Positions 19,376 to 31,536 are shown, counted from the stretch's first letter. The stretch: DNA of 37,935 bases from Hyphochytrium catenoides (GCA_900088475.1 FLMG01002404.1:1-37935), one strand, 5' to 3'. The notes: generated by a model not told the origin, from the letters alone. Translations and numbers: made by a program.

Positions 19376-20304
19376 ACGCTCTCCAAGTCCCAAGAGGAAT
19401 ATTCTGTGGCGGCGGGGAGAGATGACAATAGGAACTTTTCGGAAGGTTTAGGTTAGGCAAGGGCGCGGTTGAAGTGGTCCAACTCTCTGTATAGATGTAT
19501 AGGCTCGTCTAAATCCTGTTCTAGATAAAACCTTCCTCGTCCAAAATAGTACGCCGTTCATGAGTTATAGGTCTATCTGTAACTATATTACCACACCCTG
19601 TCTCTATGATCGTCTCGGAATACGATTAGATCAAGCTTCTACATTACCGATAGACTGATTGCCCAGGGAGGTATATTTACGGGTCAGGCGGACATCATGA
19701 TCCTCCAACCTTTGTCCGCCCGCCGCTGCCCTTCGCCGAAAAAGTGCACTCACTCATCAGCAGCAGGAAGGAAGAACTGAGAGTGCCGTCATCTGCGCGC
19801 CGTTTGTTCCTTTATTTAACTTCTCCGTTCCTCCTCTCATGCCAGAGGATCATCCAGACAGAACTGTTCTCAAAGTTTGGATCGTAGCATTGGGAGGAGC
19901 AGTGCGTGCGACAGTGAGAAGAAAGAGATGTTCCAGGTAGTGAGATAGAGAGAGGGATCATTAGGAAGGAGAAGACAGTTCAGGCGGCTGTGCTCATGAC
20001 CAATCAGACGGATCCGTGCACCCATCAAAAGGTTTTCTTCTCTAAGCTGCCTCATTTGTCGCACACACCTCCACTTCCCTGATGAGCTCTAGGAGGTGAG
20101 AGGTCCGTGGCATCTATATTCTGACTGGCTCCTCTCTTAAGTGGATCTGTCTCAGTCCTTAACTTCCTTGATGGACGGCAGGTGGACAACTGCTACCACG
20201 GATCTGGCCCTTTAGGTGATTGTTTGCTTAGCCCTGAGAAGGGCCGTTCACTTGGAAGGCAGCAAGTACCAACACCCTTTCTTTTCATCAAAAGGCTTAC
20301 CATC

Positions 20305-25237
<4,933 letters not shown>

Positions 25238-25620: not shown

Positions 25621-28600
25621 CTAGCCCCTTTCCTCTGTACATATCCTCCTCTCACTCTCGCTCCCCTCTCTCATAATCTCTCTCTCCCGCCGTTCTCCTA
25701 CTGTGCATAGTTCTGTCAGTGGTTTTTGGTGTCTATTCACATCTCCACTTTGCCCATATACTTTGACGGATGGTAGCTCTTCTTCTGCTTCTTTTTGTCT
25801 CCTTTATCCTTCGCCTCTTCCTGGATCTGCAGCTGCATGGGATCAACAAGACTCTTCAGGTGGGCAACCACATTCTGAGCTAGAGTCGTGCGGTCTAAGG
25901 TAATGTGGGATCCTGTCTTAGGACCTTTAACTTGGCCCTTGGCGGGGCAACATCGGCCGTAGCCACCCTAAAGGGAGAGCAACCACAGTCAGAGAGACTT
26001 CGGCCGGAAAAGAGACGGCTAGACCAAGGAGGATTAGAGGATGGCAATCTGACAACATTGCGCTAAAGCCACGAAAAGAGTTTTCTACAGGGAGAGCAGA
26101 AGACGCTGCGGCATGGGCTACCTCGAGGACAGATATTAACCGCCCATTGCAACAGACGTCAGCCACCTCCTGCGGTAGAACAGTTATCAGTAAGGCTGTT
26201 TCATCATTGTCATCCTATCGAAGAGAGAGAGATGCGCAGATTGATGGTGCTCTGCATTTGCAAGTGGTGCGACTGGAGATATGGCAAGAGCATCGCCTGT
26301 CTCTCATCTCTCTTTCCAACTCTATCTTTCCAGCTCTCTCTTCCAACGGCCTTCCTTTCTCTCCCTACTAGCTTATTTCTTATGATTCCTCATCCATCCT
26401 ACCTGAACTCTCTCGGTGACCCAAGCATAGTCTTCTTGCTCCAAGTCTATTCCTTGGTTTCCTGGACGGTCGTGCTTGGCATTGCCCACGTCATCCCGCC
26501 CGGCATCAAAGCCTGAGCTGAGCAGGATAAGGTCGGGATTGAAAGCGCGAAGAGGCGGAAGAAGGCGCTTGGTAATCTGCCAGAGACAGAAACAGCAGTG
26601 CCCCAGCGGTGGAGAAATGCGTGAAAGACGTCAGGGAGTGTGCACTAGTAGGTATGCAGGCGTACAGCAGAGCCCACAGAGCAAGAAGGGGATGGAAATA
26701 GGAAGAGAATCCAGTGTGTTTGCGCCAATGATAGGTGGAACCTCAGAAGCAGGGGAGGAGTTGGTTGGTGCTAAGATTGAGCACGAGCGATTACAGGGAA
26801 AGAAACAAAGCGCACAAAAGAGGAGGGAGATTGAGGGAGAGAAAGATAGTCCGTCGTACCTGGGTCCTGAACTCAGTTCTGCCGTAGACCTTAGGTTTCC
26901 CGTCATTGCCTTGAGATCTAGTCGCACTCCTTCACAGGCAAAAAGGGCACAAAGTTATGGAAAGGCCCTTTAAGGCATTTCATTGACGCCTCTTCCCCAA
27001 GACAGCCTCGTACACTCCCTCTAGCGTTCACCGGTGCTCTCTCTCGTGCCCAATGTTGCCCCACAGCTTCCTTCTTCGGCACTTCTCCTTCCTTCCCGAT
27101 ATATCTTCTTATCTGTTCTCTTTGTTAGCGATAATAAGCCTCAGCTCACCTCGTCCCTACTCCTCCCTCCTGCTTCCAAAAAGGCGCCAATGGAACGTTG
27201 ATGATGTTCTTTTGGATGTCATCATCGTCTCCAGTACCAGGGTAGAACTCATAATTATTAGCCTCATCGTGATCAAACAGGTGGATGGAGAAGAAGAACA
27301 GCTTGTTCCCGTCATTATGTTGCCTAGACAGCGTAAAGCGCGAAAAAAAGAAGCTCCTTCAGATCAGCACTGCTGAACAAGACCACGAGAGTGACAACAG
27401 GAATGCGGTATATTTGCCTGGCAGTTGGAGGACTATGCAGGGACAAAAGCAAGCTCAAGAGAAGGGAAGGTCCAAACAGTGGCGATGTACCCTGCCGCGA
27501 AATGAAAGTGAGAGCATGCCAGCACCTGACGATCTCCTCTGTCCCATTGCCATGGTGAACATCAATGTCCACAATCGCCACCCGCTCCGCATTGTGACAG
27601 TGTACAGCGTGCAAAGCCCCTGCAGCCACGTTATTGAAAATGCAGAACCCGCACGAAGACGCGTCAGCGAGAAGGCCATTCACGCCTGCATGATNNNGGG
27701 GGGGGGGAATAGCAGACATGTAGGGCAAGGGAAGAGGCAGGGAAGATGTAGCCATAGTAGAGCAAGCATGATTTTAGGGGGGGAGTGTCAGCCAAGAGTG
27801 CCTATTACGTCTTGCCCTACCTGGCGGCCTCACAAGGCAGAAAGCATTCCTGTTAAGTCCAGACAGAATGCGGTCTACGGCGTGGCACACTGCCCCGACC
27901 GCGCGGCGGGCTGCACTAAGGGAACCGGGAGAGAAGTACGTGTCGCAGTTGTCCTCTGCCTTCACATCCTGTGATGACTGCTTATGGATCTGCTTCTGAA
28001 CGTGTGGGGTGAATGGAATGGACAACTGCAGATAGGTTAACAACAGGTCGTGAGTGCGGGCTCATAGGATAAGAGAGCAGCAGCCACACGAAGGTGGCGA
28101 AAATAGCCCAGGGAGCAGTTGTTATCAAAGGCATTATCCCACTCTAGTGCTCTTGCCTTCTGCGGATCATTCCTGATCTGGTTGGAGAGGTCATTGACAA
28201 ACTTTATATAGTTTTTAGAGTGGGCCCGTGAGAGCACTTCCACTGAGGCACGAGGGAAGTCTGAGGACACTTCAAGCTCGTGCTCTCGAAAGGATGGTTG
28301 ACTCTTGATCTCGTCCCAAATTGCAGTGATGCGAGCTGGAGCCTTAAAGAGAGGAAAGGTGCCAATGCAATGAGGTCGGTGAGCGAGCCTGGACAACCAG
28401 AGGATGAAGCAGACCATTTAGCGCTTACCTCCCAGTCGGCCTCTTTTCTAGGCACGTGCTCCAAGCATTCGGGATGATGCAGTAACAGCGTCCTAGTCCG
28501 CGGCTCAATTTTAAAAAACTCACGCCGAACCTCGGGTCTCTGAGGGTTTACTGAGGCTGAGTTTAGCTCAATCCCCGCCACGTCTAGCGCGGTCCGATAT

Positions 28601-31536
28601 TCACTGTTCCGCAGCGTCCTAGGTCACAAGTGATATGGAAGAGAGATTGGGGGTCATATAGGAGAAACACATGGACGTTTAGATAACTGGACGGCTAATG
28701 GCACAGGCTAAAGACATGAAAGGCAGTAGCGGAGCTACTCAACGTACGGATTGGCTCTCTTTCTCAGTAAGAATCGTACAACGTCTCCATGCCCATTTCT
28801 GGAAGCTAGATGTAGCGGTGTCTCCCTCGTGCATGTCAGCGCATTGCGATCGGCTTTTCTGTTTTGGAGTCAAGATATGCTTAGTTTGAGGCAAAGCGGT
28901 AGGTAAGGAAAGGCAGCCCATGGAGTTACCTTTCAAGGAGAAGCTTAACAGCTCCGAGATTACCAAGACCTGCAGCCCAGTGCAGCGCTGTCTTACCCTC
29001 CTGATCTACAGCCTGAACCTGCGCACCATGGTCCAATAAGAGCTTCACAACCCGGCTGGATGCTTCCGCAGACATCTCAGGTTTACTGGACAGTCCGCAA
29101 GCGAGCATCAGCAAAGTGAGGCCCTGATTGTCTGCTGTCTCTGAAGCAAAGTTGCGGAGGATTGGAAGAGATCTCTGAATCCCGCTTTCTGGCACCTTTC
29201 CTTCCGCTACTTTCGAACGAAGGTGCTCCTCGTGTGCACTCTGCAATCCTGCGAGCGTTTTCTCTATCGTTTCCACGTCGCCCCTCCAAAGAGCGTCATA
29301 TAGTTGACTAAAACGACCTGTCATGTTGGAATTATTATATAACATGTCAACGGTACCATAGATAGGAGGACAGTGCAAGACATAGTGGGGCACTTTGGAG
29401 TCTGAGGGACAAAAAATACGAGCAAGTGGAGCGATCTCATAGCCAGGGACATGTGACATGACGATATTAGAGTTAGAACTTGTTGCCCGGGCACCCATGC
29501 TGCTGGAGAAAGTGAGAAACGATAGCAGACCTTTGCAAAGCCCAGCCGAAAGCGTAAGCGTCGTGCTCGTCTTCGTCGTCTTGGGCTCCCCTCCTGTGGC
29601 CTGTGCTGCCAGCCTCTCTAGATGGCCCTCCCAAGGTGTGCCAGGTCCAGCGCCCATGGGAAAGCCTGTAGGTCCAATCCTCATTGGGTGTGCGCTAGAT
29701 ATTCTGTCCGGGTTAATGATTTTTAAACTCCGAGGTTTGCCCTTGAGGGCTTGCGGTCTCACACTTGAAAAGTGGGCCGTTGGATCTTCAATGCGATCTA
29801 TAAAGGAACAAGTTGTAAGATGTTTTGGAGACTCTCTGGGGCTGTAGATTGGAGGACGGCAGGAGGAGGTGGTGTGCGACTTGGGAACAGGAAATCAGCC
29901 GATTATAAAAGAAACGTTAAAAGAAGAAGGGCCACAATCATCAGTGGAGAGGAGGCAGATGGTACAAACGGAGGAAGAAGGCGTGGCCCACCATGCGGAC
30001 GCTTTCCCTCGCCCAGTCCTTCCACTTTCATCCGTTCGTCGGCTGCTACCACCAAGCTTGCCAGCCCGCTGTTTGTGCCACTATAAATATCGTTATAATC
30101 TCCTGTTCCTTGCACTTCTCCCTTCTTGCTCTCTGTGTCCAACTTCCGCTTGGCGGTCACTCCTTTGATCAACTCTTTGGCCACGTCTGAGGACTCAACC
30201 ATCTCGAGGCCCAGAAGCATAGGACCTCCTGGAGTGAACTCTTCACCTTCACCGCTTTGTGCCTTGGCAACCTTCTGGAAGTATTTCTGGGCGTGAGTTC
30301 GGGTTTGAACGACAGTACGCGTCTTCACCATGGCGGCGACCTAAGGGGCGATAGGAATAGGAACGCGAGAAGTCAGACCTTGTTTCAATTGTTAGGCGAA
30401 TCACTCTATAAGGTACCTTCTTCCACTCTTTGCCATACAGCTGCAACCCTTTAAGGAAGAGTAAATGTTCCTCCTTTGTCCACCTGCCTGTCTGCTCCGC
30501 TGAAAGACTGCTTAAGGGTCCCTCAGCCTTAGCGAGGACAGGTGCAGGATATGGAAGTGTCTGGGTAGGCTGCGAGAATGATAGAAAGGACCTGTCAACA
30601 CTGTCTTCCTTCCTTGAACTTCTTAGTTGACCTCTACCTCTTCCCCCACTACCGAACAGGAGAGCCTACCCATTTGTCCTTCCTCCTTCTCACTAGGAGG
30701 ATGACACCTCTTGACCCTTCTCCTAAGCTCATACGCCGTCTTTTAGCTTCTACTTCGGCTCCTCTAAGCGCTTGTATCCCTCTATATGTCTAGCCATATA
30801 TCTTAGTCACGTACCCCTTCCGTGCTAGTGCTCTCTTTTCGCTCCTCCTTCACCTTCTTTTGCTGTTGACGCTTCTGAATCTCTTGCACCCTCTGCTGGA
30901 GCGTTAAGCTCGCGTTTGAAGATCCTCTGCCATCATCTGATCCTGTCTCTTCCCCTGAAAGGACGTCATCGGGAGTTTGGCGAGAGGGGAGAGACAAAGC
31001 AGCGCTTCCATAGTGCCTTTCCTCTGATGCCGTTTGAGTTCAGAGGTTAATTAGGTGGTTAGCCCATCGCTGAATAATAGATTGCTCCTTGGGTGGTTTT
31101 CATACATACCTCTCTCGTTGCTAAAGGGTCGAAGAGCACCTTCTCGTATGCCTTGCGGTGCTGAGGACGGCTCCTCCTGGATGAGAATGGGGGGACGAGA
31201 TCGCTTCACGGGTGGCGTTGGCTCCACAGTCGTCCGATCGTCAGCATCATCTTTCTCGGAGCTTAGCAAGCTGCTTAATCGACGCTTGCTCTCAAAGTGG
31301 GTAGAACTCAGCTCAGCTTCAGTGGCTGCCGCTAGAGCTTCAAGCCCACTAAATAATGATGGGAGAGGAGCCATTGATGCTTTATCATCATTTCTCTTCA
31401 TTGGAGCTGTGGTCACAGGCTCCTTGGATCCTGACACGCTCTCTTCATCATGCTCTCGCTTCGGACTGTCTATACGAAGAGGGTTGACAGACTCTGTAGC
31501 CGTCGTAAGCGATTGGAGGTTCTCCACTGTCTCCAT
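25621..31536 (-). CDS. Myb (SHAQKYF-class) / ankyrin-repeat / class II-type histone deacetylase multidomain protein, multi-exon
   Basis: Myb [46 protein letters not shown] (~30490-30270). Ankyrin repeats GLTLLMLAC...[50 protein letters not shown] (~29130-28570). [12 protein letters not shown]...WE/APARI, DTYFS, VRPPG/[H][25 protein letters not shown]...FYPGTG, INVPL, SSGFDA, VLE/GGY (~28500-25850). Start (31536) and 3' end are approximate. Confidence 0.85.
27695..27697. other. Assembly gap (nnn) next to a poly-G run
   Basis: tgatnnngggggggggg. It hides a splice acceptor and part of the G-H-H codons of the HDAC. Confidence 0.95.

What the first reader, a model, noticed from the sequence alone, without database searches (positions are those of the whole stretch)
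25621..31536. One gene appears to fuse a SHAQKYF Myb DNA-binding domain, ankyrin repeats and an intact histone deacetylase
Seen in sequence: the Myb-containing exon ends ...KRPH-g|GTGGGC (donor 29991) and joins in phase 1 to the acceptor TAG|at-cgc (29797), giving ...[14 protein letters not shown]... in the frame of the ankyrin exon. The ankyrin exons then splice in frame into the HDAC domain (LLER/KADRN..., RANP/TLRNSEY...HHPECLEH). HDAC Zn ligands (DVH, GFDA) and the catalytic Tyr (LEGGY) are present. Established: Rpd3/HDA1-family HDACs are normally recruited to DNA by separate transcription factors and corepressors, and SHAQKYF Mybs (CCA1/RVE/MYBS type) are sequence-specific DNA binders. 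Inference: this would be a self-targeting, sequence-specific deacetylase/repressor with an ankyrin interaction scaffold. I recall ankyrin-HDAC fusions from some protists, but the Myb-ANK-HDAC triple architecture is rare and I know of no functional characterisation.
Basis: partly seen in the sequence, partly recalled or inferred. Interest (0 to 1): 0.8.

Follow-up and report, generated by a model that had tools for sequence, protein, structure and literature searches.

The report
Myb-ankyrin-HDAC fusion gene, conserved family
This minus-strand, roughly 15-exon gene very probably encodes one protein joining a Myb DNA-binding domain, ankyrin repeats and a class II histone deacetylase, but the same three-part protein already sits uncharacterised in the databases for many diatoms, brown algae and golden algae, so it is a new member of an existing family, not a rare invention.

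Summary
Pfam finds half a Myb domain, ankyrin repeats and a collinear class II HDAC domain in the minus-strand exons.

No RNA run was listed, so the 29991/29798 junction is untested. It is only one of several in-frame GT..AG pairs.

Comparative evidence supports the fusion.
- Six environmental relatives carry Myb, ANK and HDAC in one stop-free ORF of 1121-1377 codons.
- 85 of the best 120 protein clusters have all three domains. They include transcriptome-derived diatom proteins, Triparma, Ectocarpus and chrysophytes.
- A profile of 87 full-length members matches the window's exons in strict order.
- A family-specific linker motif lies in the ankyrin exon upstream of that exon's first ATG. The ANK-HDAC part therefore has no start of its own.

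"Rare" is wrong: the architecture is common in ochrophyte stramenopiles, though I found no paper on it.

"Intact" is nearly right. The Zn ligands and catalytic Tyr are present, but the first His of the catalytic pair falls on NNN (27695-27697).

The Myb domain is the best-conserved part of the family (80% identity against 60% for the HDAC core). That fits a DNA-targeted deacetylase, but this function is inferred, not shown.

The parts
31110..31536 (-). Exon 1 (model): ATG at 31536, then an N-terminal low-complexity region with an NLS-like PPVKRSRPP. Ends in phase 1 at donor GTATGT.
   Evidence: It lies in a 182-codon open frame. There is no Pfam hit and no match to the family profile. The start and the splice to exon 2 are unverified.
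30815..30954 (-). Exon 2 (model): a Lys/Glu/Gln-rich stretch. Phase 1 in, phase 0 out.
   Evidence: The phases fit exons 1 and 3. No homology was found, so this exon is unverified.
30417..30569 (-). Exon 3: first half of the Myb domain (GRWTKEEH...YGKEWKK).
   Evidence: Pfam PF00249 6e-07, profile positions 2-25. Family profile positions 123-155. It is contiguous with exon 4 in intronless relatives.
29992..30340 (-). Exon 4: second half of the Myb domain with the recognition helix [12 protein letters not shown], then an acidic/basic tail with an NLS-like AKRKLD.
   Evidence: Family profile positions 156-211, E 9e-22. The helix is identical to that of 90 of 120 family members. If unspliced, the frame runs on to TAA at 29905-29903.
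29798..29991 (-). Disputed intron (194 nt): donor GTGGGC, acceptor TTGTTCCTTTATAG.
   Evidence: 68% pyrimidine, like most introns of this gene and unlike its exons. No frame of it matches the family profile. Other in-frame junctions are possible. No RNA data were available.
28930..29797 (-). Exon 5: conserved linker motif SLKIINP...[10 protein letters not shown] (residues 23-60), a poorly conserved insert, then the first ankyrin repeats.
   Evidence: Family profile positions 349-536, E 3e-25. Pfam Ank_2 1.6e-10. The motif starts 15 residues upstream of the exon's first Met, and there is no ATG back to the frame's stop at 29897-29895.
28748..28858 (-). Exon 6: ankyrin repeat.
   Evidence: Pfam Ank 4.7e-08. 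Family profile positions 543-573.
28429..28618 (-). Exon 7: end of the ankyrin region and start of the HDAC domain ([11 protein letters not shown]).
   Evidence: Family profile positions 577-642, E 1e-21. It abuts exon 8 at profile positions 642|643.
28157..28342 (-). Exon 8: HDAC domain. It ends at a GC-AG intron (AAG|GCAAGA).
   Evidence: Pfam PF00850 positions 5-58. Homology to the family stops exactly at 28157, although the frame stays open to 28040.
27821..28025 (-). Exon 9: HDAC domain, ending ...NAFCLVRPP plus one base (phase 1).
   Evidence: Family profile positions 712-778, E 1e-38.
27695..27697 (.). NNN after a run of ten C. It covers the codons expected for Gly and the first His of RPPGHHA.
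   Evidence: The family profile leaves exactly two positions (779-780) unfilled between exons 9 and 10. The family consensus there is VRPPGHHAG[IV]N.
27526..27697 (-). Exon 10: HDAC core (H)HAGVNG...GFCIFNN...[10 protein letters not shown], with the Zn ligands Asp and His. The 5' edge is uncertain because of the Ns.
   Evidence: Pfam PF00850 1.9e-16. Family profile positions 781-835, E 6e-36. The best solved relatives are HDAC6 and HDAC10.
27150..27323 (-). Exon 11: HDAC domain (FFFSIHLFD...FYPGTG).
   Evidence: Family profile positions 839-892, E 1.5e-26.
26860..26917 (-). Exon 11b (model): a short exon ending ...YGRTEFRTQ.
   Evidence: The phases fit both neighbouring exons (worked out by reading). 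The profile match is only weak, so this exon is unverified.
26403..26576 (-). Exon 12: HDAC domain with SGFDA (the third Zn ligand, Asp).
   Evidence: Family profile positions 948-1007, E 3e-29.
26122..26169 (-). Exon 13: ...GRLISVLE.
   Evidence: Family profile positions 1008-1023. It abuts exons 12 and 14 on the profile.
25737..25967 (-). Exon 14: GGY (catalytic Tyr), a basic C-terminal tail and the stop codon TGA at 25739-25737.
   Evidence: Family profile positions 1024-1093. LEGGY is present in 105 of 120 family members.

Best explanation
The region holds one minus-strand gene of about 15 exons, from ATG 31536 to TGA 25737, encoding about 1160 codons. It is the local member of a conserved stramenopile family. 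From N to C terminus the family has a variable region, one SHAQKYF-class Myb repeat with the near-invariant helix [12 protein letters not shown], a variable linker carrying the motif LxIxNP...TPW(D/E)GxLExL, three or four ankyrin repeats, and a class II (HDAC6/HDA1-like) zinc deacetylase domain.

Shown: the domains, their order, their match to the family, and single-ORF or single-transcript fusion in relatives.

Inferred:
- The window's Myb exon 4 is spliced to ankyrin exon 5 somewhere between 30000 and 29790.
- The strongly basic Myb binds a specific DNA element.
- That binding brings the tethered, catalytically competent deacetylase to local chromatin, where it removes acetyl groups and represses transcription.
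- The ankyrin repeats serve as a partner-docking or histone-tail-docking surface.
For: - Pfam domains are found in successive exons.
- Six environmental loci carry Myb+ANK+HDAC in a single stop-free frame of 1121-1377 codons, with all three Pfam domains.
- 255 database proteins score E<=1e-20, and 85 of the best 120 clusters have all three domains. They include MMETSP transcriptome proteins marked 'complete' and proteins of Skeletonema, Thalassiosira, Fistulifera, Amphora, Triparma, Ectocarpus and Epipyxis.
- An 87-member profile hits the window's exons in strict order, and several exon ends abut on the profile.
- The distance from Myb to RPPG in the model is about 619 residues. The family range is 481-927.
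- The conserved linker motif starts at residue 23 of exon 5, before that exon's first Met at residue 38. The frame has no ATG upstream, so exon 5 must be an internal exon.
- The disputed segment has intron-like composition.
- The Myb domain has 80% mean pairwise identity across the family, against 60% for the HDAC core and 32% for the linker.
- By my count the Myb core has 12 Lys/Arg against 3 Glu.
- The closest solved Myb is a SHAQKYF-family DNA-binding protein, 6nvz.
- The HDAC is closest to HDAC6. The D-x-H, GFDA Asp and GGY Tyr are all present.
Against: - No transcript evidence exists for this genome: no RNA run was listed.
- The donor GTGGGC is weak, and other in-frame junctions are possible.
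- The first catalytic His is hidden by NNN, and no AG acceptor is visible before it. Two alternative in-frame acceptors (an AG inside the Ns, or the CAG at 27688-27686) would delete one or both His residues (my reading).
- Exons 1, 2 and 11b have no homology support.
- DNA binding, deacetylase activity and nuclear location are all untested.
- Some family-like proteins lack the Myb (28 of the 120 listed clusters), so ANK-HDAC alone is a viable form.
Confidence: 0.78

Rival explanations
1. There are two genes. A small Myb gene ends at TAA 29905-29903, and a separate ANK-HDAC gene starts at the first ATG of exon 5 (about 29685). That would be a recent fission of the family gene.
For: The Myb frame does reach a stop 86 nt past the proposed donor. 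The donor GTGGGC is weak. ANK-HDAC proteins without a Myb exist in the database and in oomycetes. No RNA data are available.
Against: The conserved linker motif begins 15 residues upstream of the first Met of exon 5, and that frame has no ATG back to its stop. The gap between the stop and that Met is only about 220 nt and has intron-like composition. Order, strand and spacing match the fused family exactly.
Confidence: 0.06
2. It is one fused gene, but the deacetylase is catalytically impaired. The true acceptor would lie inside the Ns (NAG|AT, giving RPP-D-HA) or at CAG|GC at 27686 (giving RPPG-VNG), removing one or both catalytic His residues. The protein would then act as a scaffold or acetyl-lysine binder.
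For: No AG precedes the Ns in the assembly. Both alternative acceptors keep the reading frame (my reading). Another note of this scan reports a dead class I HDAC elsewhere in this genome (unchecked).
Against: The in-frame CAT-GCA (His-Ala) directly follows the Ns. The family profile leaves exactly two unfilled positions, Gly and His, which is the number of codons that the exon 9 overhang, NNN and AT supply. All other catalytic and Zn residues are kept. 108 of 120 relatives have RPPG followed by two residues and Ala, nearly all reading RPPGHHA. An N run after a homopolymer is a typical assembly flaw.
Confidence: 0.08
3. It is one fused, active gene, but the Myb-like domain works as a SANT-type module that binds histone tails or activates the deacetylase, as the SANT domains of CoREST or SMRT do for class I HDACs. 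It would not be a sequence-specific DNA reader, and targeting would come from partners bound by the ankyrin repeats.
For: Myb/SANT domains of CoREST and SMARCC also score against the family's Myb, E about 2e-4 to 4e-4 for the best. SANT-HDAC partnerships are well established (my own knowledge). A single Myb repeat often binds DNA weakly.
Against: The domain is strongly basic, whereas histone-binding SANT domains are typically acidic (my own knowledge). Its best solved match, by far, is a SHAQKYF DNA-binding Myb (7e-13). The recognition helix is invariant in 90 of the 99 family members that carry it, as expected for a fixed DNA target.
Confidence: 0.25

Closest known systems
Unnamed Myb-ANK-HDAC proteins of ochrophyte stramenopiles. 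Examples are UniRef A0A6S8HTR1 from Amphora coffeiformis ('histone deacetylase'), Fistulifera solaris FisN_5Hh340, Triparma laevis TL16_g08191, MMETSP diatom transcripts, and JGI entries named 'SHAQKYF class myb-like DNA-binding protein'.
   Same: They share the domain order, the same Myb helix [12 protein letters not shown], the same linker motif, the same [20 protein letters not shown] and LEGGY motifs, and a similar length.
   Different: The window's copy is split by about 14 introns, whereas many relatives are intronless. It is not close to any one member, with 60-81% identity in the best exons and roughly equal total scores to many. Its N-terminus and part of its linker are unique.
Ankyrin-bearing class II HDAC subclass of green algae and heterokonts (Uhrig et al. 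2017, PMC5499015), and Phytophthora HDA2, listed as '[ankyrin repeats], histone deacetylase' (PMC4030286).
   Same: Ankyrin repeats lie directly N-terminal to a class II HDAC domain.
   Different: Those descriptions mention no Myb domain. PMC5499015 has no occurrence of 'Myb'. Here, and in 85 of 120 relatives, a Myb is added upstream.
Corepressor complexes that pair a Myb/SANT protein with an HDAC in trans: CoREST-HDAC1/2, the SMRT/NCoR DAD-SANT with HDAC3, and plant MYB96-HDA15 (my own knowledge, not checked here).
   Same: A Myb/SANT fold and a zinc HDAC act together on chromatin. CoREST SANT domains give weak matches to the family's Myb, and HDA15 is among the solved relatives of the HDAC domain.
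   Different: Those are separate polypeptides, mostly with class I HDACs. Here the parts are covalently joined and the HDAC is class II.
Ankyrin readers and adaptors of chromatin enzymes: the G9a/GLP ankyrin repeats that read H3K9me1/2 (cited in PMC10470533), and RFXANK/ANKRA2 binding class IIa HDACs (my own knowledge).
   Same: Ankyrin repeats are associated with histone-modifying enzymes as docking modules.
   Different: No evidence here shows what the repeats bind, and no sequence relationship beyond the repeat fold was tested.

Membership tests
Ochrophyte Myb-ANK-class II HDAC family (database family, unnamed) | A single SHAQKYF-class Myb repeat with the helix [12 protein letters not shown] | tested here: met
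   Exons 3 and 4 hit family profile positions 123-211. The helix is identical to that of 90 of 120 members. Every consensus position conserved at 90% or more is matched (compared).
Ochrophyte Myb-ANK-class II HDAC family (database family, unnamed) | The linker motif LxIxNP ... TPW(D/E)GxLExL between the Myb and the ankyrin repeats | tested here: met
   Both halves are present within 80 residues in 68 of 87 full-length members, and TPW in 86 of 87. The window has SLKIINP...[10 protein letters not shown] in exon 5.
Ochrophyte Myb-ANK-class II HDAC family (database family, unnamed) | Ankyrin repeats immediately N-terminal to the HDAC domain | tested here: met
   Pfam Ank hits in exons 5 and 6. 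Profile positions 349-642 are collinear.
Ochrophyte Myb-ANK-class II HDAC family (database family, unnamed) | All three modules on one polypeptide | tested here: inconclusive
   This is shown for relatives (single ORFs; transcriptome proteins). For the window it is inferred from collinearity and the internal-exon argument. No RNA run was listed.
Class II zinc-dependent histone deacetylases (HDA1/HDAC6-like, Pfam PF00850) | Zinc ligands Asp-x-His and a second Asp | tested here: met
   DIDVHHGNG is in exon 10 and SGFDA in exon 12. The best solved relatives are HDAC6 and HDAC10.
Class II zinc-dependent histone deacetylases (HDA1/HDAC6-like, Pfam PF00850) | The tandem catalytic His-His in RPPGHHA | tested here: inconclusive
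   The second His and the Ala are read (CAT GCA). The Gly and first His fall on NNN at 27695-27697, and the acceptor site is not visible.
Class II zinc-dependent histone deacetylases (HDA1/HDAC6-like, Pfam PF00850) | A catalytic Tyr in the (L)EGGY motif (class IIa enzymes have His instead) | tested here: met
   VLE|GGY spans exons 13 and 14. LEGGY occurs in 105 of 120 relatives.
Class II zinc-dependent histone deacetylases (HDA1/HDAC6-like, Pfam PF00850) | Deacetylase activity on acetyl-lysine | not testable with these tools
   This needs an enzyme assay.
SHAQKYF-class 1R-MYB DNA-binding proteins (CCA1/RVE/MYBS type) | The (S/T)HAQK(Y/F)F motif in the third helix of a single Myb repeat | tested here: met
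   THAQKYF is in exon 4. The family's Myb best matches the solved 'Myb family DNA-binding protein SHAQKYF family' 6nvz at 7e-13.
SHAQKYF-class 1R-MYB DNA-binding proteins (CCA1/RVE/MYBS type) | Sequence-specific DNA binding | not testable with these tools
   This is inferred only, from the net positive charge and the invariant recognition helix.

The most novel reading that the evidence does not exclude
The whole family, this gene included, could be a single-chain, sequence-specific deacetylase. Its Myb recognition helix is nearly invariant from diatoms to brown and golden algae. That would mean it reads one conserved cis-element and deacetylates chromatin there without a separate transcription factor or corepressor. 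No organism has a characterised repressor of this design. The conserved linker motif LxIxNP...TPWxGxLExL could be a regulatory or docking element of this machine.
Probability: 0.4. Interest if true: 0.6.

Novelty: new member of a known kind. Interest (0 to 1): 0.4.

Why it matters
Histone deacetylases are normally brought to genes by separate DNA-binding proteins and corepressors. A lineage-wide protein that carries its own DNA reader would be a compact natural model for targeted deacetylation. It occurs in diatoms and brown algae, groups of great ecological weight for which (to my knowledge) genetic tools exist, so its binding site and target genes are directly testable. For this window the practical point is narrower. 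The fusion is real-looking and conserved, but it is not rare and not new to the databases. What is missing is any functional study.

Tried and rejected
1. RNA evidence: the look-up of sequencing runs listed no run, so read laying could not be used.

2. Word search with the ankyrin exon: it returned only generic ankyrin proteins covering 14-25% of the query, with no self hit and no orthologue. The length filter excluded full-length kin.

In hindsight this was a poor choice of query, and it says nothing about the fusion.

4. Neighbouring ABC transporter ORF, used to find the organism and an annotated locus: the best hits were oomycete ABCC proteins at 39% identity, with no self hit. The genome is therefore not in the protein collection, and its identity stays open beyond "probably a stramenopile".

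5. Eight literature searches: none turned up a paper on a Myb-ANK-HDAC protein. Only the ANK-HDAC subclass is described.

6. Scanning all three frames of 32500-25300 against the family profile: this found no extra exon, no coding match inside the disputed intron, and nothing for exons 1 and 2.

7. Considered and rejected: a sequencing frameshift instead of an intron between 29905 and 29894. Both read-through peptides are pyrimidine-rich, low-complexity and unmatched.

8. Considered and rejected: the longer exon 8 ending at 28088. Homology stops exactly at the GC donor at 28157.

9. Structure prediction was not run, because the tool returns no inter-domain contacts and the joined protein may not be built.

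Full report
**Observation.** The gene lies on the minus strand.
- The Myb-bearing exon ends ...KRPH plus one base before GTGGGC, so the intron begins at 29991.
- TTTATAG ends at 29798, and the next exon starts at 29797, so a phase-1 splice gives [10 protein letters not shown].
- LLE(R)/KADRN and RAN(P)/TLRNSEY are in-phase splices.
- [14 protein letters not shown] and VLE|GGY are present.
- Pfam, run exon by exon by reference, finds the first half of a Myb domain in 30569-30417, ankyrin repeats in 29795-28750, and Hist_deacetyl pieces at profile positions 5-58, 54-110, 119-161, 163-206 and 218-263 in successive exons.

**Gene model.** I read 15 exons from ATG 31536 to TGA 25739-25737, about 1160 codons (and the parts list).
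- Exon 8 ends at a GC-AG intron (AAG|GCAAGA at 28156). Homology to relatives stops exactly there, although the frame stays open.
- A short exon, 26917-26860, is needed to keep the frame between exons 11 and 12.

Exons 1, 2 and 11b rest on phase and open frame only.

**The disputed junction.** The Myb frame continues to TAA at 29905-29903, and the ankyrin frame is open from 29894. Between them several GT..AG pairs keep the frame. One is GTACCA at 29965 with the AG at 29880, a donor type this gene uses elsewhere. An in-frame splice is therefore weak evidence by itself. The segment is 68% pyrimidine, like most introns here (58-69%) and unlike the exons (28-53%). No RNA run was listed for this stretch, so no read-level test was possible.

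**Routes that failed.** Searching with the ankyrin exon found only generic ankyrin proteins. The one exhaustive search was swamped by giant ankyrin-repeat proteins. The neighbouring ABC transporter ORF found no self hit, and its best hits were oomycete proteins at 39% identity. The genome is therefore not in the protein collection. Other notes of this scan call it an intron-rich protist of unknown identity.

**Relatives.** A scan of metagenome contigs with the 55-residue HDAC core exon returned 80 loci. I laid each of my exons separately on them with tblastn.
- Nine loci (L001, L002, L003, L005, L006, L007, L011, L012, L013) have the Myb 1.8-2.5 kb upstream of ANK and HDAC on the same strand. 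In them, exons 3 and 4 are contiguous.
- In six of the nine, one stop-free frame covers everything: L001 1377 codons, L002 1191, L003 1229, L006 1121, L007 1374 and L011 1281.
- Pfam finds Myb_DNA-binding, Ank and Hist_deacetyl in each of the six.

I then used the L003 ORF as a full-length query. It gave 255 proteins at E<=1e-20. By my count of that table, 85 of the best 120 clusters carry PF00249, ankyrin families and PF00850 together.

Named members include Skeletonema menzelii, Thalassiosira exigua, Nitzschia sp., Pseudo-nitzschia, Cylindrotheca, Fistulifera solaris, Amphora coffeiformis, Epithemia, Mayamaea, Triparma laevis and Ectocarpus fasciculatus. There are also MMETSP transcriptome proteins marked 'complete'. 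Further members are the chrysophyte Epipyxis and the diatom Detonula. The three domains are therefore on one mRNA in many ochrophyte stramenopiles.

**Is the window's gene one of them?** A profile built from 87 full-length members matches the window's exons in strict order:

| Exon | Profile positions |
|---|---|
| E3 | 123-155 |
| E4 | 156-211 |
| E5 | 349-536 |
| E6 | 543-573 |
| E7 | 577-642 |
| E8 | 643-702 |
| E9 | 712-778 |
| E10 | 781-835 |
| E11 | 839-892 |
| E12 | 948-1007 |
| E13 | 1008-1023 |
| E14 | 1024-1093 |

Per-exon E-values run from 1e-6 to 1e-38. Several exon ends abut on the profile, which validates those splice sites. The Myb helix [12 protein letters not shown] is identical to that of 90 of 120 members. 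The distance from Myb to RPPG in the model, about 619 residues, lies inside the family range of 481-927.

**An argument from the window itself.** The family has a conserved linker motif, LxIxNP followed 15-35 residues later by TPW(D/E)GxLExL. TPW is present in 86 of 87 full-length members, and both halves in 68 of 87. In the window it reads SLKIINP...[10 protein letters not shown] and starts at residue 23 of exon 5. The first Met of exon 5 is at residue 38, in the middle of the motif. The frame has no ATG back to its stop at 29897-29895. Exon 5 must therefore be an internal exon fed by an upstream exon, and the nearest one, 194 nt away on the same strand, is the Myb exon. I put the single-gene reading at about 0.9. 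The exact junction stays open.

**Is the HDAC intact?** The zinc ligands (D-x-H in DIDVHHGNG, and the Asp of SGFDA) and the catalytic Tyr (GGY) are present. The domain is class II, closest to HDAC6 and HDAC10.

The tandem catalytic His pair cannot be read in full. Exon 9 ends ...VRPP plus one base. The assembly then shows ten C, NNN (27695-27697), and AT CAT GCA GGC, which reads ?-His-Ala-Gly. The family consensus is VRPPGHHAG(V/I)N, and the profile leaves exactly two positions, Gly and His, unfilled. That is the number of codons the overhang plus NNN plus AT would supply.

No AG acceptor precedes the Ns, however, so the assembly is locally wrong or incomplete. Two other in-frame acceptors (an AG inside the Ns, or the CAG at 27688-27686) would remove one or both His. 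I think the canonical reading is much the likeliest, but 'intact' is not proven.

**How it probably works.** The following is shown.
- The Myb domain is the best-conserved part of the family: 80% mean pairwise identity, against 60% for the HDAC core and 32% for the linker.
- Its closest solved relative is a SHAQKYF-family DNA-binding Myb (6nvz, 7e-13).
- By my count it carries 12 basic residues against 3 acidic.

From this I infer that it binds a fixed DNA element and tethers an active class II deacetylase to nearby chromatin, giving local deacetylation and repression. NLS-like stretches ([15 protein letters not shown]) fit a nuclear protein. The ankyrin repeats may dock partners or histone tails. 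The main functional rival is a SANT-like, non-DNA role for the Myb fold, because CoREST SANT domains give weak matches. None of this was tested.

**What is known.** Ankyrin-bearing class II HDACs of algae and heterokonts are published (PMC5499015), and Phytophthora HDA2 is listed with ankyrin repeats (PMC4030286). Neither mentions a Myb. Eight searches of the held library found no paper on the triple fusion. Many journals are not in that library.

The proteins themselves are in public databases under automatic names, such as 'histone deacetylase' and 'SHAQKYF class myb-like DNA-binding protein'. The scan also noted, unchecked, an ANK-HDAC-chromodomain gene elsewhere in this genome (s1-365023).

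**Rules followed.** The joined protein was never built, searched or folded.

**Verdict.** It is a new, intron-rich member of a widespread but uncharacterised ochrophyte family. It is not a rare architecture. Interest is moderate.

Noticed in passing
window 29729-29617 (exon 5, residues 23-60); also in family proteins such as P0383 residues 375-420: A conserved bipartite linker motif, LxIxNP then TPW(D/E)GxLExL, lies between the Myb and the ankyrin repeats in nearly all family members. No Pfam family covers it and its role is unknown.
   Followed up: partly
window 27695-27707: A run of ten C followed by NNN sits at the 3' end of an intron, exactly where the codons for Gly-His of the catalytic RPPGHHA should be. 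It is probably a local assembly flaw at a homopolymer.
   Followed up: partly
window 28026-28156: A GC-AG intron (AAG|GCAAGA ... CTGCAG|). It is the only non-GT donor in the gene. Homology to relatives ends exactly at the GC.
   Followed up: yes
window 20182-25237 (+): A large ABCC/MRP-type ABC transporter gene, convergent with the HDAC gene. Its stop codons lie about 500 nt from the HDAC gene's. Two long exons of 469 and 911 codons carry ABC_membrane and ABC_tran domains. The best database hits are oomycete ABCC proteins at only 39% identity.
   Followed up: partly
L001-L013 (metagenome contigs, e.g. Ga0099797_100646, Ga0307401_10002286, PJEL010008775.1): Relatives of this gene are intronless or nearly so, with G+C from 34% to 50%. 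The window's copy has about 14 introns. Intron load in this family therefore differs greatly between lineages.
   Followed up: partly
L014:6035-8125; also L004, L008-L010, L015, L016 and L018: These loci show ANK-HDAC without a detectable Myb upstream. Some are cut by contig ends, but L014 has a 697-codon frame with no Myb. A Myb-less sister form therefore coexists with the fused form.
   Followed up: no
cluster of P0480: One family member is filed under the foraminiferan Bolivina argentea in EukProt. Given the otherwise ochrophyte distribution, it may come from diatom prey or kleptoplast-associated material rather than from the foraminiferan.
   Followed up: no
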